Made by a program: the position numbers and the translations under genes. A stretch of 64,000 nt of DNA from Hydrolagus colliei. Taxonomy: Eukaryota. Where the stretch lies: positions 124,001-188,000 of the forward strand of contig JAYJKW010000425.1 of assembly GCA_035084275.1 (NCBI GenBank), given 5' to 3'. Under the pieces are notes generated by a model that was given only the letters and a program-made list of their open reading frames with translations, searched no databases and was not told where the DNA came from. Positions 6,701-60,670 of this stretch are shown here, piece after piece; position 1 is the first letter of the stretch; each line of letters begins with the position of its first letter.

Positions 6701-9573
6701 TGTAGTGACCGTGTGTTTGAGGGAGAGCAAAATGCTTCAGCCGATTGCGCACAGCAGCGTAGAGTGTAGTGACTTTGCTGGCGGATGTTTAATCCTGGTT
6801 CTGTTGTCTTTCCGGGACACAGAGGGTTTACCCAGCGTCCGCATCCTAGTGCCTCAGTCGGATACGATGTCCTCATTGGGAAGAGTGTCACTGATGTGCG
6901 TGGTGAGTGGATCAAGCCCCCGATCTCCTCTAATCCTCTGGTACGTATCTGGTCAAAGGGCGCATGGAAGGACTGAACCGGGTATAATAGAGCCGGATGG
7001 GACGTACAGCATCAAAAGCCACATCGAAGTCTCCATTGAGACCTGGAGCAGAGACTCTGTCTACACCTGCGTTCAACCCAACTCCATTGGAAAACAAAGC
7101 GCATCCTATCGCAGAGGTAAGACATATTGGATCCTATTTGCTGGTAGTGAATGGATGGACCTCTCTCGCCCCAAAGGCCTGTAGATGCTCAGTCAGTCCT
7201 TGGAACACATTCAAGACTGAGATTGGGCAAAGGGAATGAGGGAGGGAATTCCAAAGCCTCGGACGGACAGACAGACACACACACACACACAGAGAGACAT
7301 ACTCACACACATGCCCAATAAAAATCCCTCCAAAAATAAACCACAATACTGTAATAAAATTGGTCATTTCAACCCACCGTTGGCTGTGTGTGTGTGTGTG
7401 GGGGGGGGGGGGACGGGGGGGGGGGACGCTGCTGTGTGCAATTGGCTGCCGCGTGTCACTCTCCCACAAATATACAGTCACTTCACTTGACGGTATATTC
7501 TGTGAAGCACTTTGAGACACTAGGAGACGTGAAAAGCCGCGATATCAAATGCGAGGATTCTTCTTATTATTATTATTAGTTCAATGACTTTATTAAACTC
7601 TGTTTGGATCCTCAGTGTCACCTCCGCCTCCCGCCTGCATGTTTGAGCTTCTTGTCCTGGTATCTGTGTCGTCCCTTCTCCTCTTTCCGATGCTGATCGT
7701 GGCTGCCAAAATGGGGTCAAGGAACCGGGAGTCAGGTACGGTCATTCAACAACAACAACAACAACTTGGGTTTATATCACGCCCTCACTCCACGCTTCAC
7801 AGTAACGGAACCCAGGAGTGAGCCAGGGGGAAGGGGGAAGGGGGAAGGTGACCGAAGCTGAGTCCTGAAACTAGGAAGAGAAGGAGCGAGAGCGAAGGAA
7901 GTGAGGAAGGGAGTTTCAGAGCCTCGGGGCGTACTGACTGAAGACTGATGGTGGAGCGGAGAATTCGGGGGTGTGGGGTGGGAGACAAGGAGAGAGGCCA
8001 GGATCGGATGAGCGAAGGCAATGGGGTGCTATGTTGGGGAGAGAGGCGGTCGGAGAGGTAGGGGAAGGATGGTGGGCAGAGGAGTGGAGAGATTTGAAGA
8101 TAAGGGTGAGGATCTTGAAATCGATCCTCTCTGGCTCGGGCCCGGGATCCGTGACTATGAACTCTCTGAGACGCCGTCCGTTTGGCCTGGAGTGAGGGCG
8201 CTGTATAAATCCAAGTTGTCGTTGTTGTCGTCGTCGTGGTTGTCGATTAGTTTTCTTTCGCTCCCACCTTCCTTCTTCGCAACACTGACCTCGGTTTAAT
8301 TCTCTCCTTCGAAACAACAGCCGCTGAAACGAGGGACGGGCGAGTTTCCGACCCGAGACCAAATGAGCTATGGAACGAGGTAAATGCTCGGAATGGAGCT
8401 CACGAATTTCTCTTCGGTTCCCGAGAGACTGTGAATTGTCCTGAAGCACGGTGGTGGTTAGAGCACTCACCTCACGAGCGAGAGACCTGGGTTTGATAGT
8501 AAATGATTAATAACACGAATAGTAATCCCTTGAAAAATTAATAACTTCATTAAAAATGATATGAATGCATTGGTCACTCACTCACTCGCTCACTCGCTCA
8601 CGGGCCCGAGTCAGGGACAATGGGGTAGAAAGGTGACCAAAGGCTCGGTCGAAGAGAAAGGTCTTCAGTTGAGACCTGACACTGGGAAGAGAGGGGGAGG
8701 AGGATTCGGGGGGGGGGACAGGGAGGGCGGCCAGACCCAGTGGAGCGAAAGCAATGGGTGCTGGTTCGAGGAGAGGTCCCATAAGAATCGGAGAAACAGA
8801 AGCAAAAATATCAGATGCAAAGATTATTATCATATTTATAATATTAATATTTAATAATATTATTTATAATAATTATAATATTATTATAATAAATCTCCTT
8901 TCCATTCTTTCACTATTGTCCAACAAACTGGGTGGGATTAATTGACAAATGCATATATTAATTTCTTGCTTGCGATGGCATTCTTTCATCAATGGAACTT
9001 GTGTAGCTCTCAGTGGTTAGAGCGCTCGCCTAACAAGCGTGGTGAGATCTGCGTTCGAATCCAGCCAGATCAGGGCGCAACCTTGGGCAAGTTTCATTAC
9101 TTCACACACACACACACACACACGCACACACACACAGACGCATCTAATAATAATCCCTCCAAAAAAAAACACAATGATAAAAATTGGTCATTTCAACCCA
9201 ATCGGCTGCCGCGTTTCTCCCTCCCACAAATAGACAGTCACTACACTTTACAGTGCATTCTGTGAAGCACTTCACGGAATATAATGTCGCACCTAGATAA
9301 GCAAAGGTGTGTGTGTGTGTGTGTGTGTGTGGAGTACGGAAAGTTGCCTAAGGTTTTGTCCTGTCCTCTTTCCTGGGAATCGAACCCAGCTCCTCTGGCT
9401 TCTGAGATGAGCGCTCTAACTGCTGAGCGACAACAGTCTAGACTATTGTAAACGATAAGCGAGAGTTGTGTAGGTTTTGACTGTGGTTTTGTCTCCCATA
9501 GACTCTGTACGCTCGCCTGGCCATCGGGCAAGATTCTGGGCAGCGAAGTGATCGCAGAGACACAGTCTCGTGA
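3672..9573 (+). CDS. Non-rearranging VJ-C1-TM receptor with ITIM/ITSM-like tail; join(3672..3717,4790..5131,6823..7116,7616..7735,8321..8379,9502..9573), 310 aa
   Basis: Six exons, all with GT/AG borders. Phases are 1,1,1,1,0 and total 933 nt (311 codons) with no internal stop. Domain order: signal peptide, V-set with J motif, C1-set, hydrophobic TM, cytoplasmic tail with TLYARL. Confidence 0.85.
3760..4750 (-). mobile_element. Two SINE copies in intron 1 (second spans the N-gap)
   Basis: GGAGCTCC...TTAGAGCG...TTCGAATCCAG head and AAGCGCTT tail motifs on the minus strand. Confidence 0.7.
4447..4621. other. Assembly gap (N run)
   Basis: Run of n. Confidence 1.
4790..5131 (+). CDS. Germline-joined V-J exon (Ig V-set)
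   Basis: Acceptor CCCCACAAG at 4789. Translation TLTQTP...QLHC...MWYKQQ...RFSG...YSLAITNAQKTDSGTYYCAARNATNRALLFGNGSKVVIIM shows both Cys, the Trp, DxxxYYC and the FGxG J motif in one exon. Donor G|GTAATG at 5132. Confidence 0.95.
5160..6620 (+). repeat. Hexamer-period array (AACATT/AACACT variants) with about 0.3-kb higher-order repeats, in the J-C intron
   Basis: 6-bp periodicity. Block 5590-5880 is repeated at 5905-6220 and partly at 6220-6330. It abuts a SINE tail at 6620. Confidence 0.9.
6620..6780 (-). mobile_element. SINE 3' fragment
   Basis: Reverse of ...AAGCGCTTCGAGACG...ATATCAAATGCC tail. Confidence 0.7.
6823..7116 (+). CDS. C1-set constant-domain exon (Ig/TCR constant-like)
   Basis: EGLPSVRILVP...VSLMCVVSG...LWYVSG...DGTYSIKSHIEVSIETWSRDSVYTC. 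Acceptor ACAG at 6822, donor G|GTAAGA at 7117, phase 1 at both ends. Confidence 0.92.
7616..7735 (+). CDS. Stalk/transmembrane exon
   Basis: VSPPPPACMFELLVLVSVSSLLLFPMLIVAAKMGSRNRES. Acceptor CCTCAG at 7615, donor G|GTACGG at 7736, phase 1-1. Confidence 0.85.
7747..8250 (-). mobile_element. L2-like LINE 3' fragment
   Basis: (CAA)n tail followed by reverse L2 3' motifs. ORF 7916..8470(-) contains the L2-type IDFKILTLIFKSLH. Confidence 0.75.
8321..8379 (+). CDS. Cytoplasmic exon 1
   Basis: Pyrimidine tract plus AACAG acceptor at 8320. AAETRDGRVSDPRPNELWNE, donor GAG|GTAAAT. Phase 1 in, phase 0 out. Confidence 0.7.
8998..9290 (+). mobile_element. tRNA-derived SINE
   Basis: CTCAGTGGTTAGAGCG A-box, GTTCGAATCC B-box, internal (CA)n, conserved body. 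Confidence 0.8.
9502..9573 (+). CDS. Terminal cytoplasmic exon with ITIM/ITSM-like TLYARL
   Basis: Acceptor GTTTTGTCTCCCATAG at 9501. Phase-0 reading TLYARLAIGQDSGQRSDRRDTVS* (TGA 9571-9573). Confidence 0.72.
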   Translation, partial: TLYARLAIGQDSGQRSDRRDTVS

Positions 9574-15532: not shown

Positions 15533-15732
15533 NNNNNNNNNNNNNNNNNNNNNNNNNNNNNNNNNNNNNNNNNNNNNNNNNNNNNNNNNNNNNNNNNNNN
15601 NNNNNNNNNNNNNNNNNNNNNNNNNNNNNNNNNNNNNNNNNNNNNNNNNNNNNNNNNNNNNNNNNNNNNNNNNNNNNNNNNNNNNNNNNNNNNNNNNNNN
15701 NNNNNNNNNNNNNNNNNNNNNNNNNNNNNNNN
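15533..15732. other. Assembly gap (N run)
   Basis: Run of n. Confidence 1.
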
Positions 15733-19061: not shown

Positions 19062-19248
19062 NNNNNNNNNNNNNNNNNNNNNNNNNNNNNNNNNNNNNNN
19101 NNNNNNNNNNNNNNNNNNNNNNNNNNNNNNNNNNNNNNNNNNNNNNNNNNNNNNNNNNNNNNNNNNNNNNNNNNNNNNNNNNNNNNNNNNNNNNNNNNNN
19201 NNNNNNNNNNNNNNNNNNNNNNNNNNNNNNNNNNNNNNNNNNNNNNNN
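19062..19248. other. Assembly gap (N run)
   Basis: Run of n. Confidence 1.
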
Positions 19249-21871: not shown

Positions 21872-23700
21872 GAAACAACAACAACAACTTCGATTTATAT
21901 AGCGGTAGGACGCCGGGCGGTATCTCAGAGGGCGTCACCACAACGCATCTCTGGACTGAGCCAGGGGTGGGGTTAGAAATGTGACCAAAGGCACGGTCGA
22001 AGGGAATGGTCTTCAGCTGGAACAAGCAACTGGGAAAAGAGGGGACGAGGCAGAGGGAATGAGGAAAGGAGTTCCAGAGCCTCAGAGCGTAGTGGCTTAA
22101 AGCACGGCCAACGAGGGCGGAGGATTCGGGGGACAAAATGCAGGCCAGACCTGGATGACCGATGGCAACGGGATCTGGTTTGAGGAGAGAGGAGGTCGAA
22201 TAGATGGGGGGGTTGGGGGTGCAGAGAAGTGGAGAGATTTGAAGACAGGGGTGAGGATCTTGAAGTGGTTCCTATCTGGGCTAGAGAGCCTGTGACGTCT
22301 GGCAAGGACTGAGCTAATGGGGGAGCGAAGTTTGGTGCGGGTGAGAATGTAGGCAGCAGAGTGTTGATTGAGGTGGATTTTATGGATTGTGATGGAGGGG
22401 AGACCGGCGAGGAGGGCGTTGTAATAGTCCAGCCGAGATTTGGCAAAGGCATAGACTAGGGCTTCAGATGCTTCCGGGGCGAGATATTGCTGGAGACTGA
22501 GGTGGAAGAAAACGATGCTGGTGAGGGTCTGGAGGTGAGGGGGGAAGTACAATTGGGGGTCGAACCTGACGCCAAGGTTGCGCACAAGTTCGGAGGATTT
22601 TATGGGCCGGCCAGGAAGGTGGAAGAGGTGAGAGCCATGCGAATGCAGACGTTGACAAGAAACAAAGAGTATGGCTTCTGTCTTGTCAACATTCAGCTGT
22701 CGGACGTTCACGCTCATCCAGCCCTTGGTCTTTACCAAGGGCTGGATGAGCAGGCTGACGTAGTGTCAGGGGACTGGCGGTCGCAAAGTGGCTTGGAAAA
22801 ATAAAGTTCGGTGTCATCTGCGTACATGTTGAAATATACCGAATGTCTGTCGATGGCGTACTTAAGAGGGAGCGTGTAGATGAGGAAGAGGAGGGGACCA
22901 ACAGTTTAGCCTTGGGGTACCCTACAGGTAACTGGGTGAAAGCGAGGGGGAAAGACGTTTGTGGAGTGTATTGCTGACGGTTTTTGCGGTAGGACTCGAA
23001 CTAGGCGAGTTCGGTCCCACTGAGGTGAATGACGGAGGGCAGCCGTGGAGGAGGATGGCATGGCCGATTGTGTGGAATGCAGTGGACAGGTCCAGGAGGA
23101 TAAGGAGGCAGAGGGAGACCTAGTCGCAGATAGAGAGTATATCGTTTGTGGCTTTCTCAAGTGCAGTCTCTGTACTGTGGGAAGGGCAGTAATCGGAATG
23201 GCGTGCTTGCAAAAGGGTGTCATTCGAATGCTTCGGCAAGGATGTCCAGGATTGAAATAGGGTGGTAGTGGCTGGGGTTTGAGGGATCAATGCCAGGATT
23301 TTTGAGTGGGGATTGTTGGCAGCAGTTTTGAGGGGAGCAGGGACTGATATTTTGAGGATGTCAGCTAGCAGTGAGCAAAGGAGCTGGTTGACCAGTAAAT
23401 TGGTGACAAGAGGGTCGAGGCAGCAGTTGGTGGGCTTCGTAGTGGTGATGGCACGTAAGAGGGAGGAAGGAGATACTGCGGAGAAGGAACATAGCAATAG
23501 GTCGTGAAAGGAACGGATAAAGTGGAGGTTGAGGGTTACGGAATGGGGTTGGTGGTTGTGGTCGACGAGAGGCAGGAGGATGATGCTGTCTGGCGGATAT
23601 TGTGGATTTTGGAGGTGAAGAAGTCCATAACCTTCTCGAACTTTTTATTTGAAGTGAAGATTGTGGATGCTTGAATGGGCGCATGGAGGAGGTGGTGGGA
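21872..23700 (-). mobile_element. 5'-truncated L2-like LINE with frameshifted reverse transcriptase
   Basis: RT motifs [37 protein letters not shown], and a (TTG)n tail at about 21875-21890. Confidence 0.9.
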
Positions 23701-24046: not shown

Positions 24047-25147
24047 TCAATCCCAAAACCATTTCTCCATATTTCGAGCACATCTATAGTTGATGTTACA
24101 TTTGATATATTCACACGCAGTGCATACTTGTAATTGCCAGCCATCTCTTCTTAAAATTTTGTAGGATTTCCTCCACTTGAAGTAGTTCATGTACTTCACA
24201 GGATCTTTATCAAGATGATGCAAGTATTCTGCCAATTCTCTGGCTGAACTAAAATCATCCACGTGAATGAAAGTTTCGGCTGGAACTAAAGCTTGATAGT
24301 TTTCTCTGGATGGTGCCAAAACCACTGGCACAGTTCCCATATGCAAAGGAGAAAAGAGCTTTTCAGTCACGTAATCCTTATGGATCGAGTTTTGAAAAGC
24401 AAGATAGAATTTACAACTTCTTAATAATGGTTCATAATCACTATCCTGAATGAGTTTTCCAAAGGCGCGCCCATGCACAGAAATATTAATGAACTTCATC
24501 AGTTCGTAATACTACTTTACTCTTTCGAAGTGAGGCCTCCAGTGGCTCACAATCCAACACACCAGCTTGGTCTTCTTGGGTATTTTAAAATCTGAAGTTT
24601 GTGGATCAATAACCAAATTGCCATAAGGCACTGGAATATCTGAATCCCGACGATATGTTAAGGTGAGGTTACACAGTTGGCCGAGCCATTTATTTTTTGG
24701 ACTGTGTGTAGGTGAATCGATATTCCACTAAATCCATCTCTGGAAAGGAGGCCGTGGCTGTTTGGGCAGATTAGACAAGTTTGCATAAATTTGCATATGA
24801 TGCATAATGACAGCATGGGATTTGGAATATAGATTTCTATTGGAAGTTAAACTGCAGCCATCTATGTTGAATCTTGATTTACAAGAATCAAGACTAAATG
24901 GGACACCCCAAGGCCAGAACCAAATGAGTAGAAGCGTGTTCTCCTCAGTCTTTTGCCAAAAGGGGATTGTCAGATTTACAGCTGGTAGTGGGATGTAACT
25001 GCAGCTGTTTGATGGTATTAGGTAGAGCAACAAAAATATTCCAGTGATTCCAAATATGATTATGACAATAAGAAATCTTCGAAAACTTCTTGTATTAAAT
25101 ACTGCCCCCAACGTTTCCTGTGAAAGGAGCACATTTCTATTACACAC
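24047..25147 (-). pseudogene. Alpha-1,3-fucosyltransferase (GT10, FUT9/FUT7-like), single coding exon, two in-frame TAG
   Basis: Type II TM N-terminus, LLIWFWPWG, PRPPFQRWI*WNIDSP, NLTLTYRRDSDIPVPYG, KLVCWIVSHW, KFYLAFQNSIHKDYVTEKLF, FIHVDDF. One continuous frame with stops at 24728-24730 and 24512-24514. Confidence 0.9.
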
Positions 25148-31739: not shown

Positions 31740-32340
31740 CACACCCTCTGTCACACTGACCGATGTGATGGAGTGTGAGATGAGAGGGGGTGTGAGTGTG
31801 AGAGCGTATGAGTGTGTGACAGGTTGTGAATGTGAAGTGTTATGAGTGTGAGGGGAGTGTGAATTTGAGGGGCTTTGAGTGTGTGACCGGGTGTGAAGGT
31901 GAATGTGTGAGGGGTGTGTGAGTGTAACGGAATATGAGTGTGTGATGGGGTATGTTTGTGAAGGAGTATGAATGTGAGGGGGGTATGAGTGTGAGGGACG
32001 GTAAGTGTGAGGGGTGTGAGTGTGAGGCGGTGTGAGTGTGGGGGCTGTGTGAGGGGGGTGTGAGTGTGAGCGAGTATGAGTGGGTGACAGGGTGTGATTG
32101 TGAGGGGGTGTGAGTGTGAGGGGTGTGCGAGTGTGAGGGGGTTCTTGTGTGAGGGATAGTAAGTGTAAGGATGATGTGTGTGTGAGGGTGTGTGAGGGTG
32201 AGGAAGTGTGAGTGTGACGGTGTGTGACTGTGTGTGTGAGCAGGTTTGAGTGTGAGGGTGTGTGAGGGTGAGGAAGTGTGAGGGTGAGGAAGTTTGATTG
32301 TGAGGGGAGTGTGTGTGTGAGCAGGTGTGAGGGTGTGTGT
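31740..32340. repeat. Degenerate GTGTGA/GAGG low-complexity array
   Basis: G/T/A-rich with dinucleotide-like periodicity. Confidence 0.85.
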
Positions 32341-32342
32341 GA

Positions 32343-33616
32343 GCTGTCTGCTGCGTTCGACACAGACCTGTCTGCTGCGTTCGACACAGTCGATCACACC
32401 ATCCTCCTCCAACGTCTTTCCTCCCACCTCAACCTTCAAGGCACAGTCCTTGACTGGTTCCATTCCTATCTGACCCACCGTTTACATTTTGTTTCTTCCA
32501 ACGTTTTTTTTTCAAACCCCCGCACAGTTTCTCACGGCGTCCCTCACGGCTCTGTCCTCGGCCCCCTCCTTTTCCCCCTTTACACGCTCCCTCTGGGCGA
32601 TGTCATCCGCAACCATGCGGTAAATTTCCACATGTATGCGGACGACACCCAGTTGTACCTTTCTGCCTCATCCCTCAACCCCCAGACCATCGATGTTCTG
32701 ATAGCATGTCTGTCCGACATCGAGTCCTGAACGAGGGAAAACTTCCTGCAATTGAACGTGAGTAAGACCGAGGCCCTCCTGATCGGCTCAAGCCAGCGCC
32801 TCCGCACATCGGGCGCTGCCAGCCTCAACATTAAAGGCTGCACTCTCCACCTCACAAAGCCAATCAGGAACCTCGGCATCATGTTCGACCACAAACTCTC
32901 CTTCCTCCCCCACATCCGCGCCTTGACCGGCACCGTTTATTTCCACCTGAGCAACATTGCCAGGCTCCGCAATTATCTCACCCCCCGCGCTGCCGAAACA
33001 CTCGTGCATGCATACATCACCTCAAGGCTGGACAACGGAAACTCTCACCCCAGCTCCTCCATTCACAGGCTGCAGGTCATCCAAACCTCTGCAGCCCGTG
33101 TATTATCCCGCACCCGCCTTTGCGACCACATAACCCCCACCCTCGCCCGTCTCCAATGGCTCCTCATCCTCCAGAGAATCGAGTTCAAGATCCTCGTCCT
33201 CACGTTCAAGGTCTTACATGGCCTTGCCCTGCCCTATTTAACCAATTTACTCTGCACCTATAAGCCCACCCGGACCCTCCGTTCAGCAGGACTTGGCCTG
33301 CTCCAAGCCCCCCGCCCGAACCCCCACACCATCGGAGGCCGGGCCTTCAGTTTCTCCGCTCCCACCCTATGGAATTCTATCCTCCAATCCCTTCGTCTCG
33401 TTTCCTCCCTTTCCTGTTTCAAGGCTGGTTTAAAGACTTTCCTTTTCGACCGTGCCTTCTGTTCCCCCCCCCTAATTTTTCGACCTCCCCTACCTTTTTC
33501 AACACCCTGCCGAACACTCCCCCCCCAGCTCGGGTTACACGTCTCATGTGCATCGCCTTGGGACGTACTCCCGACGTGAAAGGCGCTCTAGAATTCTAAT
33601 TTGTTGTTGTTGTTGT
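32343..33616 (+). mobile_element. Relatively young 5'-truncated L2-like LINE (RT C-half, 3'UTR, TTG tail)
   Basis: [33 protein letters not shown]. One premature TGA at 32728 (TGG in the 60.37-kb copy). The frame continues to 33579, and (TTG)n lies at 33600-33616. Confidence 0.95.
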
Positions 33617-33666: not shown

Positions 33667-33672
33667 TTTATT
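33667..33672 (-). terminator. Polyadenylation signal of the SNAD-like gene
   Basis: AATAAA on the minus strand about 300 nt after the stop, just before the convergent L2 tail. Confidence 0.6.
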
Positions 33673-33699
33673 ACTAATTGTTACATTTTACACTTATCC

Positions 33700-33960
33700 C
33701 CAACCCCCAGCCACCAGCCCCGTGCCCCCACCCCATCCCTCCTCTCTAGCCCCCAGCCCCCAACCCAGCCCCCTCCCCAGCCCCCAAATCCCACTCCATC
33801 CCCCACCCCAGCCCCCACCTCAGCCCCAAACCCCACTCCAGCCCTTACCCCAGCCCCCAACCCAGCCACCACTCCATTCTCCAGCCCCCACACTCCACCC
33901 TAACCCCACCCCAGCACCCACCCAAGCCCCCAAAGCCCAGCTCCAGACCAGAACTCCAGC
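33700..33960. repeat. C-rich (CCCAGCCCC) low-complexity tract in the SNAD-like 3'UTR
   Basis: Repeated CCCAGC/CCCCAA units. Confidence 0.75.
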
Positions 33961-33975
33961 TCTGATCCACACTGC

Positions 33976-35512
33976 TCATTTGCTGGCCATTTGAACCCGA
34001 TTTTTCCCTCTGGAACTCTGCGGGTTCTGCTGATAGATTCCCCCTTTGGGGTTTTGTTTATCCTTACGTGGGGGGTTCTGGTTAATATTCTTGTTCACCT
34101 TGGGTCGGTTCGTTTCCTTGGGCGCCTTATTCTGCTTGGGCTTGTTAGCCTGGGGGGTCCTGCTTGCCCCAGCTTGATTTCTTTCCATTTTCACCTCCTT
34201 CCCCAAACAGAAACGTGGCTCATGGCAGCGTTCACTCTTCTCCAGATTATTCTCCTCCTTCACATCACAGCGATAAACCATGTAGGGATTGTTCTGACTT
34301 CCTCTCAGGAGGCGAGCAAAGTTCTCTGTAATCTTCTTCGGTTCCACTTCAGACACGAGCTCAGGGCAACTTTCGAGGCTTCGCCCTCCCGCACAACACA
34401 CTTTGCTGTACACAAAGTACTGGTGAACATTTGACCAGGAGTCGAACGGAGGATCATATAACTGCTCGACAATGTCAAGCTCTTGTTTGCCACTGAAGCA
34501 CTTTGTCAGACACGGAGTGTTGGTGATGTAGAACACAAGGCAGCCTCCGTTTGCTATGAAGCTGTTGGCTCTCTCTCCCACTTTATCAGCACACGAAGCT
34601 TTACCGTCTTTGCCAAATAGGATCCTATACTCGGTGCAGACATCCCCATGTTTTGGGTACACGGCAATGTAGTTGATTTTGGTTGTAGAGGCTTTGTCTG
34701 GATTCACAAAGTCTTCATCGTTAAAGATTGTTGGAATGGCATTAAATGTGCCGTGCCACATGTACTGCACATCTTCTTTTCCACGGCACTGTTCATCAGT
34801 CAGTACAATCAGGAAACCCATCTGTCCACCAGGAGTTATTTTCTCCCTGTGAAAACTAGTGCAAGGAACAACAACAACAATTTTGTTTGATACAGCGCCC
34901 TCCACGCTGGACGATGGACAGCGTCAGGGGCAGGGGTTAGAAAGGTGACCAAAGTCGCGGTCGGTCGAAGAGAAAGGTCTTTAGCTGGGACCTGAAACTC
35001 GGAAGAGAGAGGGGGAGAGGCGAAGCAGTGAGGAAAGGAGAGTGAGGGAGGGGGATAGAGGGAGGGGAGAGAGAGGTGCGTGAGATGATGGGACTGAGGA
35101 ATGGAGAGGGGGTTAAGAGAGAGAGGATGGGAGGTGGTGAGAGAGGGCGCGAGGCGATGGGAGTGAGGAAGGGAGTTCCAGAGTCTCAGGTCGTCGTGGC
35201 TGAAGGCACGCCCATGAAGATGGAGCAGAGGATTCTGGCAGGAGGCCAGACCCGGTGTAGCAAAGCCAAGCGGTAATGCATACGAGGAGGCATGAGGTCA
35301 GAGAGGCAATGGGCGCTGAAGAGGTTAGAAAGCGGTGGTGGGAGAGACGGAGAGGTAGGGGAGGAGCAGAGAATTGGAAGGATTTGAAATAAAGGGTGAG
35401 GATCTTAAAATTGATCCTCTCTGCGACAGAGAGCCAGTGAAGTCTGGTAAATACTGGGATAATGTGAAAGCGGAGTTTGGTGTGGACCGCAGAGTTTTCA
35501 ATCGGTTGGTTT

Positions 35513-35557
<45 letters not shown>

Positions 35558-38457
35558 TGAGACACAATGAGAGTGATATAGAGCGAGCGGGTACCCAGGC
35601 ACAGAAGGGGAGACAGAGTGAGAGAGGGTGAGTTACAGTGAGAGAGGTTGGGACAAAGCATGTGTGAGATTGAGTCATTGTAAGAGAATTCAGAGTATTA
35701 GTGTGAAACGGAGAGTGTGAAAGGGTGTGAGACAGACAGCATGAGAGTGAGATTTGAGAGAGAAAATGCAAGCAGGAATGTGTGTGTGAGTGAGAGACTG
35801 GGTGAATTATTGTGTATGAGAGAGTATGTGTGCGTGAGTGAGAGTGTATGTGAGAGTATGTGAATGAGCGTGTGTGAGAAAGTGTGAGTGAGAGAGTGTG
35901 TGAGAGGGTGGAATATGTCAGAATGCGTGATAGAGGTGTGAGAGTGAGTGTGTCTGAGATGGTATGTAAGAGAGGATGGTATGCAAGAGAGTGTGTGTGA
36001 GTGTGGTGTGTGTGAGAGAGTGATTTGTATGAGAGGGTGGTTTTTGTGAGAGGGTGTGCATGAGGATGTGGTGTGTGTGATAAGCTGTGTGTGAGAGTGT
36101 GGTGTGTATGAGAGTGTGGTGTGTTTAAGAGGTTATGTGTGAGAGGGTGGTGAGTGAGAGTGTACGTGAGAGGGTATGTGTTAGAGGATATGTGTGTGTG
36201 ATTGTGTAGTGTGTGAGAATGTGATGTTTGTGAGAGTGCATGTGACAGTGGTATGTGTGAGAGCGGTCTGAGAGTGAGAGTGTGACAATGTGGTAAGAGA
36301 ATCATAGAATCATAACTAGTCCTATATTGCCTCCCCTCATTTCTCCTCCCAACATGCATCACTTAACATTCCCCTACATTAATCTTCAACTACCATGTAT
36401 CTGCCCATTTTACCATTCGGTCGATAACCTCTTGAAGTTGACTTCTACACTCCTCACTATTTTTCCTAACTGTTTCATCAGCAAACTTCGAAATGGTTCT
36501 CCCTATATGCAAGTCCAGATCATTAATATAATTTTTAAAAATGCAGTGGCCCCAACACCGATCACTGGGGGATGCCACTGTAGACTTCCCTCCAGTCTGA
36601 CAAGCAGCCGTTCACCACAACCCTATGCTTTCTGTCTCCCAGCCAGTTCTGGATCCATGTGGCCACTGTCCCTTGTAGCCATGGGCCTTTAGTTTCCTTG
36701 TAAGCCTTTCATGTGGCACTTTGTCAAATGCCTTTTGAAAGTTCATATAGGCTACATGACTACTCTCATCCACCCATTCCGCTGCCTCATCAAAAAATTC
36801 GATCAGACATGTATGGCAAGGTTTTCCTTCAGCAAATCCATTTTGGCTGTCCACTATTAACCTATATATTTCTAAGCGAAGATCTCTCATGTCCCTGATT
36901 ATCGTCTCTTGAAGTTTCCACCCCACTGATGTTAGACTGGCCGGTATTTCCCAGGTTTGGCCTTGTACCCCTTCTTATACAGGGGAGTAACATTAGCAAC
37001 CTTCCAATCTTCTGGTACCTCGCCTGTGTCTAAGGAAGTTTGAAAGTATGTGTCCAGAGTCTCTGCTATTTGCTCCCGTACTTCCCTCAGTAGCCCAGTA
37101 TGCATCCCATCCGGACCGGGCTACTTATCTACCTTGAGCGGCGTCAATCTTTTTAGTATATCCTCTCTGTTTATACTTATACTATCCATTTCATCTACCC
37201 TCTCATCTAGTACTGGGGCAAAGGCTGCATCTTCTTCTGTTGTGAAGACAGAGGCAAAGTACTCAGTACATGTGCCATGTCGTCTGCCTCCACACTAAGA
37301 TGGTCTGCTTGGTCCCTATTTGGCCCCACCCTACCTTTCACTAACCTTTTATTCTTGATAAAAGCCTATAAAATGTATCAGTGTTCCCTTTAATGCTACC
37401 TGCTAATCGTTTCTCATGCAGTATTGTTGCCCCTCTAATTTCCCTTTTGAGTTCCCTCGTGCATTTCCTATATTCTGTTTGGTTGCCTTGCGTACTTTGG
37501 GCATGACATTTATATAAGCCTACTTTTTGTTATTCCGAATTACACTAGTTATCCAGGGAGGACTGGATGACCTACCTTTTCACTTCGTGGGAATGTATCT
37601 GTTCTGTGCCCGAAATATCTTCTGCTTTGAGGCTTCCCATTGCTCCTTAGCTGTTTTACCTGCCAATCATTCGTCTATCTTCTTCTACTGTTTGTTGGTC
37701 TATAAAGGAACAGTTACGCTGTTATGGGTATACACCCATAGCAGCGTAACTGTTCCTTTTGTGTTCCTTAACTCTAACCAGATAGATTCTGTTTTCAGGC
37801 CTTCTTGCACCTCGTTCCTTTGTAAGGCTGTAACCGTTTCCTTAATTCGTATCGTCACACGCCTTCCATTTTTTCAGAAAGTGGGTAAGAAAGTGTGCAA
37901 GAGTGTGTTGTAAGAGAGTGGTGTATGTTAAAGTGTAGTGTGTGAGCGAGTGTATGAGAGTACATACACCATGTATATGTGTGTGTCAGAGTGTATGTGA
38001 GGATGTGGTGTGTGTAAGAGAGTGGTGTGTGTGAGGGAGTCTGTGTGAGCGTATGGTGTGTGAGGGTGTGGTGTGAATTTGGTGTGCATGAGAGATAGGT
38101 ATTTAAGTGAGAGAGTGTGTGTAAGAGTGTGGTGTGTCAAATTGGTGTGAGAGAGTGGTGTGAGAGAATGTGTTTGAAGCGAAAGATTGTATACGTGAGT
38201 GATAGTGTATTTACGAGTGAGGAAGTCTGTGTGAGTGAGTGTGTGTGTACGAACTTGTGTGCGAGTGAGTATGTAAGAGTGTGTGAAAGTGAGAGATTGT
38301 GCGAGTGAGAGACAGAGAGATAAAGAGAGAGAGGATCATTCCTCAAAGACACTTACGTGTTCACATCCTTCTGCAGAACATTTTCATTGATGGCTGTGGC
38401 ATCTGAGATGATAGTGAAGATCAGTGTGATCAGGATGCAGGAGAGAACCTTCATCAT
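33976..38457 (-). CDS. Secreted AID/APOBEC-like deaminase (SNAD1 family-like); complement(join(33976..34846,38357..38457)), 323 aa
   Basis: Exon 1 is the signal peptide MMKVLSCILITLIFTIISDATA|INENVLQKDVN with donor AC|GTAAGT (phase 2). The exon 2 acceptor TTTTCACAG|G is in matching phase. Motifs QMGFLIVLTDEQC, CTEYRIL, GCLVFYITNTPCLTKC, FVYSKV and VYRC...C...C follow the SNAD1 pattern (recalled family knowledge, not searched). Total 972 nt. Confidence 0.85.
34865..35510 (-). mobile_element. L2-like 3' fragment in SNAD intron; its (TTG)n tail abuts the exon-2 acceptor region
   Basis: (CAA)n at 34868-34880 followed by reverse L2 3' motifs. Confidence 0.75.
35510..36295. repeat. Degenerate GA/GT low-complexity array
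   Basis: GAGAGTGTG-type periodicity. Confidence 0.8.
36295..37880 (-). mobile_element. CR1-like LINE with degraded RT
   Basis: SQNGFAEGKPC, YMNFQKAFDKVPHERL, ISKFADET, with a CATAGAAT tail at about 36300. Confidence 0.9.
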
Positions 38458-40538: not shown

Positions 40539-41434
40539 TTATAAGGGATATTTAGCTGCTTTGTTTGAATTCCTCGCTGAATTTCGCCTGGTTCACAGCA
40601 TAAATGTGACCCATAAATGTGTATTAGTGCAGCAACTGAGATTCGAAAGCATGCATCCGGTTTCATAAAGTACATAGACTGGATCATTGTAGCCCGAGTC
40701 AGAAAAATACTTTGCAACTTGGCTGTATAGGTAATATATAATATAAGTCATCCACAAAAGTATAAAACTACCGGATATAGCGAAGAGAATTGCGATAGAT
40801 TTTCTCCTGTTCACCATCTCTGTGTCGTTAGTATTTTCAGGGTTGTTGTTGGCGAGCAGACACCTGCGGACTCTGTTTGCTGCTAAAATATGTCTGACGG
40901 TCAGAGTGTTCAACAGCAAAATCAGAACGAAGGCAATGCACGGAGTTAGTATGGTGTAAGACCAGGAATAAACTTCCCACGCAAGTGATTCATAGAAACT
41001 TTCCTTCATCTTACAGAACCATGGTAACGTATTAATTATATACCAAGGCATAAGTGAAATACCAAGGAATGTTTTTGAAGCAGCTCAGAGAGCAAATTAT
41101 TCCTATCACAACAGCCGCTGTTCTCGCAGTGCAATATGTTACTTTCAGCCTCTGACAGCAAATGGCAACAAAGCGATCAAATGTGAACGCCAATGTGAGC
41201 CACACAGAGCAGTCAGTTGCAGCACAAAGCAAACTTTGTGCTGACCTGACTCCAGCGAACACGCTGGAGTCAAGTCAAAGAAACAATTTGGGAAATAAAG
41301 ATAATTTAGTCGAGTCAATATCACGTCGCTGATAATAACGAGACAATCGGCAGATGACATGGAAACCAGATATCGAGTAATGCATCTGGAGAGACATTTT
41401 CCACTGCATAGGATCACAATCGCTCTTATGTTAA
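40539..41434 (-). pseudogene. GPR139-like class A GPCR pseudogene (exon 2)
   Basis: Acceptor CCATACAG at 41435. VNIRAIVILCSGKCLSRC..., AFTFDRFVAICC, NRRKSIAILFAIS, LSCCTN. At least four frameshifting lesions (near 41245, 41050, 40605 and 40560). Confidence 0.9.
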
Positions 41435-46360: not shown

Positions 46361-47811
46361 TAAGACTTCATGTTGCAGCAGTTGAGATCCGGCATAAACA
46401 CAGGGGACAGGTTAGAAAGATAGGCCTGGCAAGCACTTGAGTGGCCCATCTTGACTTATCTATGTTTTCAAATTACCGTCTGTAGGCAGTGAAACGGGAA
46501 CCTGTGATCATTTACTGACTTAGTGAAATATTGGGCAAGTTTACTTTCTCAGAATGCCTCTGTTGATTTACCGATAAGTAGAAATCCGGTTGTTCATTAA
46601 TGGACGGTGTTATCAAAGTTGCAGTAATTCCTTCACAAACAAAATCAACTGGTCACTAAATCCAGAACTGTTTGTGTGATACGTCTGCTCTGGATTGGCT
46701 GCACAGAGAGGGAGAAACTGCGTTTGACTGTATACTGGATAAAAGGGAACACAATGATTGACTCAAGCACACCTTGTTTCCCTTTGAATCCAATAAAATG
46801 TTACCAAATTTCACAAGTATCTCAAATTCCATAAATATATGAAAATTCAGAGGCAAGCGTGACAGTATCCATGGAATCTCCTTGGAGATGAACTGTCTCC
46901 AATATCAGTTGTCATCGGACTGTCAGAAACGAGATCATTCACAGAGTGATTCCAGTCTGTTCCATTTCACTCTGCAAGTCAAAGCTCTGATGGTCGGGGT
47001 GCTTCTGGTGAAGCTGCAGGAATGTTTGTTTGAAGGCAATATGAAGGCATGATACGTGGTTTTAGGTAAAAAGCCTCCAGCTTCAACCCCAAACGAAACA
47101 TGTGGGGTCGCCACGCGCCTGCCAATCTGCAAATAATATTTTTCGGAATTAGCTTACGTTTCCATCCCCAAACCATGGCTATAGAATAATAGAACCATAG
47201 AATTTTACGAGACAAAGGGAGGCCATTCGGCCCGCCTAGTCTGCGCCGGCTCTTTGGAAAAGGCAACTCAATTCCACTCCCCAGCTTTCTTCCCATCACC
47301 TATCAGACTTATTCTCACAAAATTAAGTTTTGTGAGAATTCCATTTTAAAAGCTGTTATCGAATCGGCCTCCAACACCTTTTCAGGCAATGCATTCCAGA
47401 TTCGAACAACTCGCTGAGTGAAAACATTTCTCCTCAGATCCCCTCTGCTTCATTTTTAAACTATTTGTTTTCGAGTCACAGATTCGCCTGTCGGTGGAAA
47501 CAGCGGAAATAAGTTATTATTGTTAAGTTTCTGAGGGATTATTACGAGGCATGTGTATTAAGGAAAGTTGACGAATCCTTTACCGAGACCAGCCCCTGTA
47601 ATTGAATCGCAGTTGCCAGATTATTGGTCACAAGTCAACTAATTGTAGGAATGAATCAATCTAATTGGTAATTTCCCTTTCTCTCTCTGTCTCTTTGACT
47701 CTCTGTCCGTCTGTCTCTCTGTCCGTCTGTCTCTCTGTCCCTCTCTCCGTCTGTCCGTCTGTCTGTGTGTCTGTCTGTCCGTCTGTGTGTCTGTGTGTCT
47801 CTCTCTTTCCT

Positions 47812-47859
<48 letters not shown>

Positions 47860-47864
47860 TGTAG

Positions 47865-48781
47865 CTAACCTGGTGGCCATTGTGATCCTGTCCCGAGGGA
47901 GATGCGGTCTCTCCAAATGTGTCTCTCGCTATCTTATAGCTATGTCAGTGGCTGATCTGATGGTGGTCATTTTCGCGGTGATTTTCGATCCTATTGCTGT
48001 TTATTACTTCCTGTATTCATTCGTGTCCATCACCCCTGTTTGCGCGCTGCTAACTGTGCTTAGTGGTGCAGCATCGGCAATATCTGTCTGGCTAACTGTG
48101 GCTTTCACCTTTGACCGATATGTCGCCATCTGCTGCCAACAACTGAAAAACAAATATTGCACCGAAAAAACAGCTGCTGCAACGATAGCGGGGCTGAGTG
48201 TGTTCTTCATTGGGGAAAAACTTTCATGGTATTTTGTCTATGAACCACAGTTAATAGTGAACAGTATACCGTGGGGATGTGATGTTAAAACAAGCTATTA
48301 CTCATTTATCCCGTGGACAGTGTATGACCTCCTCGACCTTATTTTAACCCCGATGCTCCCATTCTTTGTGATTTTGCTGCTCAACGCCCTGACTGTGAAG
48401 CACATCCTGGTGGCCAGTCGAGCCCGCAGGAGATTGGGGGGACACAGTTATGGGGACAGGAATAGAGGTGAGAGAGACAGTGATCCAGAGATGAAGAGCA
48501 GAAGGAGAGCCATTATTTTACTTTTTGCGATATCGGGCAATTTTATAGTGTTATGGATGGTATATGTTTCATTTTTTTTATACCGGAGAATTTCAGGGTC
48601 AAAATACTTCTCAGGCTACAATGATCCATTGTATATTTTTCGTGAAACTGGCTTCTTGCTGCAGCTTTTGAGCTCCTGTACAAACACGTGCATTTACGCT
48701 GTTACCCAGACTCAATTCAGAGAGGAGATAAATAGAGCGGTGAGATTTTCTTTTGCACTAATTTTAAAATTATTTCATTAG
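47865..48781 (+). CDS. GPR139-like GPCR exon 2, intact; probable gene join(43728..43797,47865..48781), 328 aa
   Basis: (CT)n-CTGTAG acceptor, phase 1. Open frame through TM2-TM7 with AFTFDRYVAICC and CTNTCIY. AATAAA at 49154. Confidence 0.88.
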
Positions 48782-59439: not shown

Positions 59440-60670
59440 TGAGGAGATGCTGGATTTCCTCGAGTCCAAAATTTAGAAAATCCGCTCTGCGGTTTCTTCC
59501 CCCCACCACTACTCCACCTCCGCGACCTAATCAGCTACCTCAACCCCCACTCACTCCCCATTTCACACTTTCAACCCCACCACCCCGCTTTCAGTCACAA
59601 AAACAATTACCTCCATGAAACCCACCATGTGCTCATTGGACCATCCCTCCTCCGCACCCAGCTCCATTTGTTTGCCCCGCTCATTTCTGACAGCATTAAC
59701 CTTTCCCTCTCCTCAGGAACCGTCCCTACCTCCCTTAAAACAGCCACCATCACCCCTACCCTGAAGAAACCCTCCCTTGATGCGTCGCAACCATCAAGTT
59801 ATCGACCCATCTCCAACCTCCCGTTTCTATCCAAAGTCCTTGAAAGAGTGGTTGCCTCCCAGCTCCGCTCTTTCCTTGCAAACCACTCACTCATTGAACC
59901 CCTCCAATCAGGTTTCCGCCCTATCCACAGCACAGAAACTGCCCTGGTTAAGGCCACAAATGACACCCTAACCGCCTGTGACCAGGGCTCCCTCTGCCTG
60001 CTCGTCCTCCTTGACCTGTCTGCTGCGTTCGACACAGTCGATCACACCATCAACGTCTTTCCTCCCACCTCAACCTTCAAGTCACAGTCCTTGACTGGTT
60101 CCACTCTTATTTGACCCACCGTTTACATTTTGCTTCTTCCAATGGTTTTTCTTCATACCCCCGTACAGTTTCTTACGGCGTCCCTCAGGGCTCTGTCCTC
60201 GGTCCCCTCATTTTCATCCTTTACACGTTCCCTCTGGGCGACGTCATCCGCAGACATGGGGTAAATTTCCACATGTATGCGGATGACACCCAGTTGTACC
60301 TTTCTGCCTCATCCCTCAACCCCCAGATGATCGATGTTCTGACAGCATGTCTGTCCGACATCGAGTCGTGGACGAGGGACAACTTTTTGCAATTGAACGT
60401 GAATAAGACCGAGGTCCTCCTGATTGGCTCAAGCCAGCGCGTCCGCACATCGGGCGCTGCCAGCCTCAATATCCAAGGTTGCACTTTCCACCTCACAAAG
60501 CGAATCAGGAACCTCGGTATCATGTTCGATCAAAAACTTTCCTTCCTCCCCCACATCCGCGCCTTGACCGGCGCCGCCTATTTCCATCTGCGCTGTTGCC
60601 AGGCTCCGTAATCATCTTACCCCCCGAAACACTCGTGATGCATACATCACCTCACGGCTGGACTACGGAA
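59440..60670 (+). mobile_element. L2-like LINE fragment (RT), closely similar to the 32343 copy
   Basis: [64 protein letters not shown]. Frameshifted and 3'-truncated. Confidence 0.93.

What the first reader, a model, noticed from the sequence alone, without database searches (positions are those of the whole stretch)
33976..38457. Secreted AID/APOBEC-like (SNAD1-type) deaminase with a Cys-x-Glu zinc motif
Seen: a two-exon gene with signal peptide and poly(A) signal. The position of the family HxE reads C-T-E-Y-R-I-L, followed by CLVFYITNTPCLTKC. Established: AID/APOBEC and SNAD deaminases ligate Zn with H(x)E plus PCx2-4C, whereas CxE is typical of free-nucleoside cytidine deaminases. Inference: a three-Cys Zn site in a secreted APOBEC-fold protein is unusual and may mark a distinct clade or altered substrate. 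His four residues upstream (PKHGDVC) is an alternative ligand.
Basis: partly seen in the sequence, partly recalled or inferred. Interest (0 to 1): 0.8.

Follow-up and report, generated by a model that had tools for sequence, protein, structure and literature searches.

The report
Secreted APOBEC-like deaminase, all-cysteine zinc site
This is an intact two-exon gene for a secreted relative of the AID/APOBEC mutator enzymes. Its zinc-binding histidine is replaced by cysteine, and the same swap is fixed in a whole, so far undescribed, branch of the family running from sharks to salamanders.

Summary
On the minus strand, exon 1 (38457-38357) encodes a signal peptide and exon 2 (34855-33976) encodes the rest. 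The splice sites are canonical and AATAAA lies at 33672-33667. The 326-aa product passes Pfam SNAD1 (PF18744, 45-46 bits against a cut-off of 25). Its AlphaFold model matches almost only AID/APOBEC structures, though with low TM-scores.

The motif C107-T-E109 occupies the family's H-x-E position. Substituting Cys with His in silico raises the Pfam SNAD1 score by 5.5 bits, while Ala or Asp change it by less than 1 bit. The curated model therefore expects His there.

The Cys is neither an error nor a one-off. Its TGC codon is two bases away from any His codon, and Cys and Glu are invariant in all 32 relatives recovered. These come from at least 8 shark species, coelacanth, two salamanders, sturgeons, gar, bowfin and one teleost.

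His103 is not conserved and is rejected as a ligand.

This copy is a long-branch outlier. It has lost a clade-conserved aromatic residue after strand 4, where it carries a Cys-rich insert. It has also lost one Cys of the C-terminal cluster and gained a 76-aa basic tail.

No activity or substrate is known for any SNAD. I rate it a new variant of a known kind, of moderate interest.

The parts
38357..38457 (-). Exon 1 CDS (residues 1-33 plus two bases of codon 34): signal peptide and the start of the conserved N-terminal segment
   Evidence: Translation. Donor AC|GTAAGT. It aligns to the family consensus A-x-E-L-x-x-x-V-L-x-x-I-V-x-x-F. The S. canicula and Xyrauchen genes have the same exon 1 = aa 1-33 structure.
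38398..38457 (-). Predicted signal peptide, residues 1-20 (MMKVLSCILITLIFTIISDA). Cleavage after A20 or A22 follows the -3/-1 rule.
   Evidence: Hydropathy scan and position matching the signal peptides of relatives. No dedicated signal-peptide predictor was available.
34856..38356 (-). Single intron (3.5 kb, GT..AG), filled with GTGAGAG-type simple repeats and a LINE reverse-transcriptase fragment
   Evidence: Sequence. ORFs 36612-37105 (-) look like reverse transcriptase by eye; they were not scanned.
33976..34855 (-). Exon 2 CDS (last base of codon 34 to the stop codon): the deaminase domain and the tail
   Evidence: ORF. Pfam SNAD1 45.4 bits. tblastn of the spliced protein back on the window.
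34630..34638 (-). C107-T108-E109: first zinc/catalytic motif, at the N-terminus of predicted helix 2, with Cys in the place of the family His
   Evidence: Codons TGC ACC GAG. Cys and Glu invariant 33/33. Pfam probes. DSSP helix 74-79 in piece numbering.
34498..34515 (-). P148-C149-L-T-K-C153: second zinc motif (PCx3C) in the loop after predicted strand 3
   Evidence: P, C and C invariant 33/33. C to A costs 6.4 bits each in Pfam SNAD1. Strand 104-112 lies just before it.
34648..34650 (-).
   Evidence: The column holds P, K, S, G, I, R, T, Q and others, and His only in the window protein. H to A changes the Pfam score by 0.9 bit.
34366..34398 (-). C187-C188-AGGRSLES-C197: remodelled loop after strand 4. 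The clade's conserved Tyr/Phe is Cys here, followed by a unique ~10-residue insert with two further Cys.
   Evidence: Column 187 is Y/F in 31 of 33 sequences, and the insert is absent from all 32 relatives. C to Y and C to F raise the Pfam score by 1.8 and 2.5 bits. pLDDT is 51-60 here.
34207..34269 (-). C-terminal cysteine cluster C230...C244...C250, lacking the first Cys of the family CxxC (K240/S241 instead)
   Evidence: That column is Cys in 32 of 33 sequences. Putting Cys at 240 or 241 raises the Pfam score by 2.5 and 4.5 bits and extends the match to the end of the model. The four-Cys cluster is described in PMC5889660.
33979..34206 (-). 76-residue K/N/Q/P-rich basic C-terminal tail (residues 251-326, pI 11.2), with no counterpart in relatives
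   Evidence: Composition and pI. Relatives end within a few residues of the last Cys or carry unrelated Cys-rich repeats.
33667..33672 (-). AATAAA polyadenylation signal, ~300 nt after the stop and downstream of a G-rich (GGGGCTGGGG-type) 3'UTR repeat
   Evidence: Pattern search and sequence.

Best explanation
The locus is an intact gene for a secreted, zinc-dependent deaminase-fold protein of the SNAD1 family, the secreted sister group of AID/APOBEC. It belongs to an old, conserved sub-lineage in which the first zinc ligand is Cys instead of His. Shown here: the gene structure, family membership, an APOBEC-type fold, the Cys-for-His replacement and its invariance across the clade. Inferred: after the signal peptide is removed, Zn2+ is held by Cys107, Cys149 and Cys153 plus a water molecule, and Glu109 shuttles the proton for hydrolytic deamination. 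By analogy with the family, the most likely substrate is cytosine in single-stranded nucleic acid met in plasma or in the secretory/endocytic pathway. An all-Cys site of this kind is catalytically competent in tetrameric cytidine deaminases (my own knowledge). The window's copy is a fast-evolving, lineage-specific paralogue. It has a rebuilt loop after strand 4, one missing structural Cys and a new, strongly basic tail that could bind polyanions such as nucleic acids or glycosaminoglycans (inference).
For: Gene model. Family: Pfam SNAD1 at 45-46 bits against a cut-off of 25, and all 16 aligned relatives also hit PF18744. Fold: AlphaFold model with pLDDT 76.7 and pTM 0.81; element order is strand 2, C-x-E helix, strand 3, PCx3C loop, strand 4, helix, strand 5. 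47 of the top 50 Foldseek PDB hits are AID, APOBEC1 or APOBEC3A/B/C/F/G/H, the best being 5cqd_C at E=2.9e-4 and probability 0.99. Cys for His: probes of the Pfam model. Conservation: C107, E109, C139, P148, C149 and C153 are invariant in 33 of 33 sequences from sharks, coelacanth, salamanders, sturgeons, gar, bowfin and a sucker. An invariant Glu next to the ligand argues for retained catalysis. Secretion: nurse-shark SNAD1 proteins were detected in plasma by LC-MS/MS (PMC9207270). Their best bony-fish hit is gar LOC107075984, which is P0044 (CSE), at 2e-26 to 5e-30. Zebrafish SNAD1 scores only 1e-4 to 0.03 against them. Expression of a relative: the closest relative, P0001, sits on a 943-bp intron-free RNA-type contig.
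Against: No SNAD has a demonstrated activity or substrate (PMC8201067; PMC11004436). The structural matches have low TM-scores (0.30-0.38), and helix 3 after PCx3C is barely formed in the model. An all-thiolate site in a secreted, oxidising compartment could be oxidised or disulfide-bonded instead. This copy has lost two residues that its relatives conserve and sits on a branch of 1.67 substitutions per site, which also fits relaxed constraint. No transcript evidence exists for this gene or for its tail.
Confidence: 0.6

Rival explanations
1. The window's copy is a decaying or non-catalytic paralogue, for example a binding-only or decoy protein. The family is real, but this gene has lost function while its ORF remains open.
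For: It has the second-longest terminal branch in the tree (1.67; at most 38% identity to any relative). The Tyr/Phe after strand 4, conserved in 31 of 33 sequences, is lost. The first Cys of the CxxC, present in 32 of 33, is also lost, leaving an odd number of non-ligand Cys. The 76-aa low-complexity tail looks like translation running past the family's usual stop position. Inactive AAD copies arise repeatedly (PMC5889660).
Against: The ORF is intact across both exons, with canonical splice sites, a signal peptide and a poly(A) signal. All four catalytic-site residues and C139, C230, C244 and C250 are retained. SNADs are reported to evolve fast precisely in their substrate loops (PMC5889660).
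Confidence: 0.22
2. In this clade Cys107 does not bind zinc. Instead it forms a disulfide, for example with C149 or C153, in the oxidising secretory pathway. The domain would then be a metal-free scaffold with a non-enzymatic role.
For: The protein is secreted and Cys-rich, with 12 Cys in the mature chain. The literature predicts disulfides in SNADs (PMC5889660). The model shows no regular helix 3 after PCx3C.
Against: Glu109 is invariant in 33 of 33 sequences, two residues after the Cys, which is hard to explain for a purely structural disulfide. Motif spacing and position are those of the zinc site in all deaminases. C-x-E with PCxxC is a known functional zinc site in other deaminase clades (PMC3239186).
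Confidence: 0.1
3. His103, four residues upstream, serves as the zinc ligand, so the site is a conventional His-Cys-Cys site displaced by one turn.
For: His is present at -4 in this protein.
Against: The column is not conserved; there are 13 different residues among 33 sequences, and His appears only here. H103A changes the Pfam score by 0.9 bit. The residue lies in the loop before the helix.
Confidence: 0.02
4. The Cys codon is a sequencing or assembly error for His.
For: None found.
Against: TGC differs from CAC and CAT at two positions. All 32 relatives from independent genomes and transcriptomes carry Cys at this column.
Confidence: 0.01

Closest known systems
[quoted passage not shown] 2018, PMC5889660; carp and zebrafish SNAD1 of Majewska et al. 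2024, PMC11004436)
   Same: Signal peptide and two-exon gene. Pfam match above the gathering score. PCx3C motif, matching the 'CVxxC' spacing reported for fish SNAD1. Conserved Cys at strand 3 and after strand 1. A C-terminal Cys cluster. An APOBEC-like fold with TM of about 0.3-0.4 to APOBEC3, as reported for zebrafish SNAD1.
   Different: C-x-E instead of H-x-E. Only modest scores against the curated model (37-50 bits for clade members). This copy also lacks one Cys of the four-Cys cluster and the aromatic residue after strand 4, and it adds a basic tail.
Nurse-shark plasma SNAD1 proteins (contigs Seq27503 and Seq44752; PMC9207270)
   Same: Cartilaginous-fish SNAD1-domain proteins. Their best hits are gar LOC107075984 and a Carcharodon paralogue (LOC121272184) whose LOC number suggests it lies next to P0039 (LOC121272186). 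These are the same kin as the window protein's relatives. They were physically detected in plasma.
   Different: The window protein is not close to any shark sequence (38% identity or less).
Classical AID/APOBEC deaminases (AID, APOBEC1, APOBEC3A-H)
   Same: Best and almost only structural matches. Helix between strands 4 and 5 (helix-4 division). PCxxC-type second motif and a catalytic Glu.
   Different: They are intracellular, use H-x-E, and their His also stacks on the target cytosine. Sequence identity is 7-13%. Helices 5 and 6 are replaced in SNADs.
CDA/CDD free-nucleoside cytidine deaminases and blasticidin-S deaminase (C-terminal-hairpin division)
   Same: A C-x-E plus PCxxC three-cysteine zinc site (PMC3239186).
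   Different: Different topology: there, strands 4 and 5 form a hairpin with no helix 4. There is no Pfam or Foldseek match to them. They are cytosolic and oligomeric.
Bacterial YwqJ-type toxin deaminase clade
   Same: A precedent for both HxE and CxE versions inside one deaminase clade, in secreted proteins (PMC3239186).
   Different: Bacterial polymorphic toxins of the other structural division. No detectable sequence relationship was tested or seen here.

Membership tests
SNAD1 (Pfam PF18744) | Score above the curated gathering threshold of the family model | tested here: met
   45.4-46.5 bits against 25, E about 1e-11, covering model positions 14-194 of 213.
SNAD1 (Pfam PF18744) | N-terminal signal peptide | tested here: met
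   Hydrophobic core of residues 4-17 followed by S-D-A, aligned with the relatives' signal peptides. Tested by inspection only; no SignalP was available.
SNAD1 (Pfam PF18744) | H-x-E zinc/catalytic motif at helix 2 | tested here: not met
   The motif reads C-T-E. The model prefers His by 5.5 bits and scores Cys no better than Ala or Asp.
SNAD1 (Pfam PF18744) | PCx(n)C second zinc motif after strand 3 | tested here: met
   P148-C149-LTK-C153, invariant in the clade. C to A costs 6.4 bits each.
SNAD1 (Pfam PF18744) | Four-Cys cluster: end of strand 5, CxxC, and a last Cys (Krishnan 2018) | tested here: not met
   Three of four are present (C230, C244, C250). The first Cys of CxxC is K240/S241 here, against Cys in 32 of 33 sequences.
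SNAD1 (Pfam PF18744) | [quoted passage not shown] | tested here: inconclusive
   A ~43-residue insert between strand 13-18 and strand 62-65 is present but modelled mostly as short strands and turns. The C-terminal 196-220 has pLDDT 54-56.
AID/APOBEC-like deaminases (helix-4 division) | Deaminase fold with a helix between strands 4 and 5 | tested here: met
   Model elements are strand 143-151, helix 170-183 and strand 191-195. 47 of the top 50 Foldseek hits are AID/APOBEC, but TM is only 0.30-0.38.
AID/APOBEC-like deaminases (helix-4 division) | Active-site His, described as 'absolutely conserved in active AADs' (PMC5889660) | tested here: not met
   Cys107 occupies this position, in this protein and in all 32 relatives.
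AID/APOBEC-like deaminases (helix-4 division) | Aromatic residue in loop 7 that restricts the pocket to pyrimidines | tested here: inconclusive
   The clade's Tyr/Phe three to four residues after strand 4 is Cys187 here, while Y183 at the strand end is kept. Which of them equals APOBEC3A Y130 could not be settled without a residue-level structural alignment.
AID/APOBEC-like deaminases (helix-4 division) | Cytosine deamination in single-stranded nucleic acid | not testable with these tools
   No biochemical data exist for any SNAD.
CDA/CDD cytidine deaminases | C-x-E plus PCxxC, combined with a strand 4-5 hairpin topology and a match to the family profile | tested here: not met
   Only the motif matches. 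There is no Pfam hit to cytidine or dCMP deaminase families even at E up to 10. Helix 4 is present. No CDA structure appears among the top Foldseek hits.

The most novel reading that the evidence does not exclude
The C-x-E proteins form a separate, ancient lineage of secreted AID/APOBEC-like enzymes. It would predate the split of cartilaginous and bony vertebrates and would have been lost in most teleosts. Its all-cysteine zinc site removes the His that stacks on cytosine, giving a different substrate or chemistry from classical APOBECs. Examples would be free or modified nucleosides/nucleotides, a different base in extracellular nucleic acid, or a redox-switched activity in plasma.
Probability: 0.2. 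Interest if true: 0.8.

Novelty: new variant of a known kind. Interest (0 to 1): 0.55.

Why it matters
AID/APOBEC enzymes are central to antibody diversification and antiviral defence, and their H-x-E...PCxxC site is treated as a family constant. A conserved branch spanning several vertebrate classes keeps the catalytic Glu and both Cys but has swapped the His for Cys. That shows the constant is not universal, and it splits 'SNAD1' into two zinc-site types. Members of this branch are probably the SNAD1 proteins actually seen in shark plasma. They are therefore the natural starting point for the first biochemical test of what secreted deaminases do. Small, secreted, disulfide-stabilised deaminases with an unusual pocket may also interest base-editor engineering.

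Tried and rejected
- The word-indexed homologue search with exon 2 found nothing. With the alignment it returned only 10 proteins, and with the sucker protein only 5. None was a canonical H-x-E SNAD1. A direct alignment or tree of C-x-E against H-x-E sequences was therefore not possible, and I probed the Pfam model with point substitutions instead.
- Sequence searches of the PDB gave only spurious hits, to a pilin and an MbtH-like protein.
- The first AlphaFold model, built from 16 sequences, gave Foldseek hits too weak to use (best E=4.5e-3, TM 0.22-0.29). It was superseded by the 30-sequence model.
- Supplements of the SNAD papers hold no alignments.
- I tested whether the K/R four residues after the Cys (30 of 33 sequences) is a clade-specific charge compensation for the third thiolate, like Arg56 of B. 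subtilis CDA. The Pfam probe was inconclusive: R to A -1.6, R to K -1.8, R to L -0.9 bits.
- Synteny: there is no second SNAD copy in the window. Only three short, weak nucleotide matches were found, all to the Carcharodon locus and none near the SNAD gene. No other genes are called within 10 kb at the S. canicula or Carcharodon loci.
- The alternative acceptor (cacAG|G at 34846) is also in phase. I rejected it because it would delete the Phe that 90% or more of the relatives conserve.
- The species of the window could not be determined. The exact protein is not in the 15-billion-protein collection.
Full report
**Gene model.** The finding lies on the minus strand. Translation from 38457 gives MMKVLSCILITLIFTIISDATAINENVLQKDVNT and then meets a consensus donor, AC|GTAAGT. 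A 309-codon ORF at 34905-33976 holds the rest. A pyrimidine tract followed by AG at 34857-34856 joins it in phase, giving ..DVNT-FHREK... The spliced CDS is 981 nt and encodes 326 aa. A second in-phase acceptor nine bases downstream would remove a Phe that 90% or more of the relatives conserve, so I prefer the first. AATAAA lies at 33672-33667, about 300 nt past the stop and beyond a G-rich repeat. The S. canicula and Xyrauchen relatives have the same structure, with exon 1 encoding aa 1-33. The N-terminus has the n-, h- and c-regions of a signal peptide.

**Family and fold.** Exon 2 matches Pfam SNAD1 (PF18744) at 45.4 bits against a cut-off of 25, and matches SNAD2 only weakly. A full HMMER pass over 1.84 billion representative proteins gave 17 hits, 16 of them true relatives, with E down to 1.3e-26. 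All 16 aligned sequences (the window piece and 15 of these relatives) hit PF18744. An AlphaFold model built on 30 sequences has pLDDT 76.7 and pTM 0.81. Its element order is strand 2, helix starting at C-x-E, strand 3, PCx3C loop, strand 4, long helix, strand 5. This is the helix-4 topology of AID/APOBEC and TadA, not the hairpin topology of CDA (PMC3239186). In Foldseek against the PDB, 47 of the top 50 hits are AID, APOBEC1 or APOBEC3 structures. The best is APOBEC3B 5cqd_C at E=2.9e-4 and probability 0.99. TM-scores are only 0.30-0.38, similar to the 0.4 reported for zebrafish SNAD1 against APOBEC3A (PMC11004436). The fold is therefore deaminase-like and specifically APOBEC-like.

**Does C-T-E sit where the family has H-x-E?** I could not obtain canonical SNAD1 sequences, so I probed the curated model with single substitutions.
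- In the window protein, C107H raises the SNAD1 score from 46.5 to 52.0 bits and the SNAD2 score from 15.3 to 19.3.
- C107A gives 47.2 and C107D gives 46.9, so both are neutral.
- E109A costs 3.6 bits. C149A, C153A and C139A each cost about 6.3.
- The same Cys-to-His change raises the score in the S. canicula (+6.1), coelacanth (+11.8) and axolotl (+6.1) proteins. It does not in gar (-0.3), where a long insert probably shifts the alignment.

The curated SNAD1 and SNAD2 models therefore have a His column exactly two positions before the conserved Glu, and Cys is essentially absent from it. The literature agrees. Majewska et al. describe His plus two Cys in nearly all of 38 fish SNAD1s, and Krishnan et al. 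call the active-site His 'absolutely conserved in active AADs'.

**Is the Cys an oddity of this gene?** No. Every relative recovered carries C-[STA]-E. They are:
- sharks: Scyliorhinus, Carcharodon, Mustelus (3 genes), Heptranchias, Stegostoma, Pristiophorus and Heterodontus (3 genes);
- coelacanth, axolotl and Pleurodeles;
- sturgeons (Acipenser, Huso), gar and bowfin;
- one teleost, Xyrauchen, plus several unnamed transcript contigs.

In a 33-sequence alignment, C107, E109, C139, P148, C149, C153, C230, C244 and C250 are invariant. The coelacanth protein XP_014353512.1 is one of the two sequences Majewska et al. list as lacking the conserved motif, and it reads KKRCSEYK. The codon TGC is two substitutions from either His codon, so a sequencing error is excluded. 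His103 is unique to this protein, so it is rejected as a ligand.

**Link to proven secretion.** Two SNAD1-domain proteins were detected in nurse-shark plasma by LC-MS/MS (PMC9207270). In that paper's supplement their best bony-fish hit is gar LOC107075984 (2e-26 to 5e-30), which is the C-S-E protein P0044. Zebrafish SNAD1s score only 1e-4 to 0.03 against them. Their best shark hit is Carcharodon LOC121272184, whose LOC number is two away from that of P0039 (LOC121272186). The plasma proteins therefore very probably belong to this clade. This is an inference, because I did not see their sequences.

**What is peculiar to the window's copy.** It has a terminal branch of 1.67 substitutions per site and no relative above 38% identity in the tree alignment (44% over the matched stretches in the phmmer search). 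It groups only loosely with one shark lineage, an unnamed transcript group and the salamanders. Three features set it apart from its relatives.
- The Tyr/Phe three to four residues after strand 4 (31 of 33 sequences) is Cys187, followed by a unique insert of about 10 residues containing Cys188 and Cys197.
- The first Cys of the C-terminal CxxC (32 of 33 sequences) is missing.
- A 76-residue K/N/Q/P-rich tail of pI 11.2 follows the last conserved Cys. The domain itself has pI 5.5.

The Pfam model also prefers an aromatic residue and a Cys at the first two of these positions. These changes fit either rapid adaptive change in a substrate loop, as described for SNADs, or relaxed constraint.

**Mechanism.** The most likely reading is a secreted zinc enzyme with a Cys3-water site and Glu109 as the proton shuttle. 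[quoted passage not shown] The invariance of Glu next to the ligand across the split between cartilaginous and bony vertebrates (my own estimate: roughly 450 million years) is the strongest argument for retained catalysis. H-to-C variation within one deaminase clade has a precedent in YwqJ. All-Cys sites work in tetrameric CDA (my own knowledge). In APOBEC3A the His also stacks on the cytosine, so its loss should reshape the pocket. Whether that changes the substrate is untested. No SNAD has yet been assayed.

**Verdict.** The alternative-His idea is rejected. The 'altered substrate' idea remains open. The gene is a new, divergent member of a publicly sequenced but undescribed C-x-E branch of SNAD1.

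Noticed in passing
L002:9101-13721 (Xyrauchen texanus CM047306.1) vs L005:9084-15039 (Acipenser ruthenus OV754648.1); also L006: The only teleost members of the clade are two razorback-sucker genes on two chromosome-scale scaffolds, one inside a FISNA-NACHT NLR gene model. They are 76% identical in protein to the sterlet gene and nest inside the sturgeon clade, whereas gar against the sucker protein is 54%. The loci align collinearly at 77-93% nucleotide identity through the intron and both non-coding flanks. This is not expected after more than 300 My of vertical descent. It is a candidate fish-to-fish horizontal transfer, or cross-species contamination, which seems less likely because identity is about 85% and the two copies have diverged.
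   Followed up: partly
window 24047-25147 (-): A family-10 fucosyltransferase is split into two ORFs. The N-terminal domain (PF17039) is at 24728-25147 and the C-terminal domain (PF00852, E=6e-51) at 24047-24499, with about 230 nt between them. This is either a frameshifted pseudogene or an unusual intron.
   Followed up: partly
window 6645-7184 (+): An ORF contains an immunoglobulin C1-set domain (PF07654, E=2e-9), probably an exon of an Ig, MHC or TCR-like gene. An immune-type gene therefore lies about 27 kb from the secreted deaminase.
   Followed up: partly
window 47765-48781 (+) and 40593-41051 (-): Two rhodopsin-family GPCR ORFs (PF00001) lie on opposite strands. One appears full-length and intronless; the other covers only the C-terminal half. 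They look like paralogues by eye; I did not compare them.
   Followed up: partly
window 32278-33579 (+), 59629-60611 (+), 22097-22738 (-), 36612-37105 (-): LINE reverse-transcriptase fragments. One abuts the 3' end of the SNAD gene and one lies in its intron. The copies at 32.3-33.6 kb and 59.6-60.6 kb share near-identical peptide stretches, so the element was active recently.
   Followed up: no
window 33690-33975 (- strand sense): The 3'UTR between the stop codon and AATAAA is almost entirely a G-rich GGGGCTGGGG-type repeat, C-rich on the plus strand. Long GTGAGAG/CTCTCAC simple repeats flank both exons and dominate much of the window, with strong GC-skew swings.
   Followed up: no
P0003, P0004, P0012, P0042-P0045 (bony-fish relatives): The sucker, sturgeon, gar, bowfin and coelacanth members carry a C-terminal extension of about 130-150 residues made of CxxC-type cysteine repeats (..C.NCK....C..C..). 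It is absent from the shark and salamander members and from the window protein, which has an unrelated basic tail instead.
   Followed up: no
window 4447-4621, 15533-15732, 19062-19248: Three runs of N (562 bases in all).
   Followed up: no
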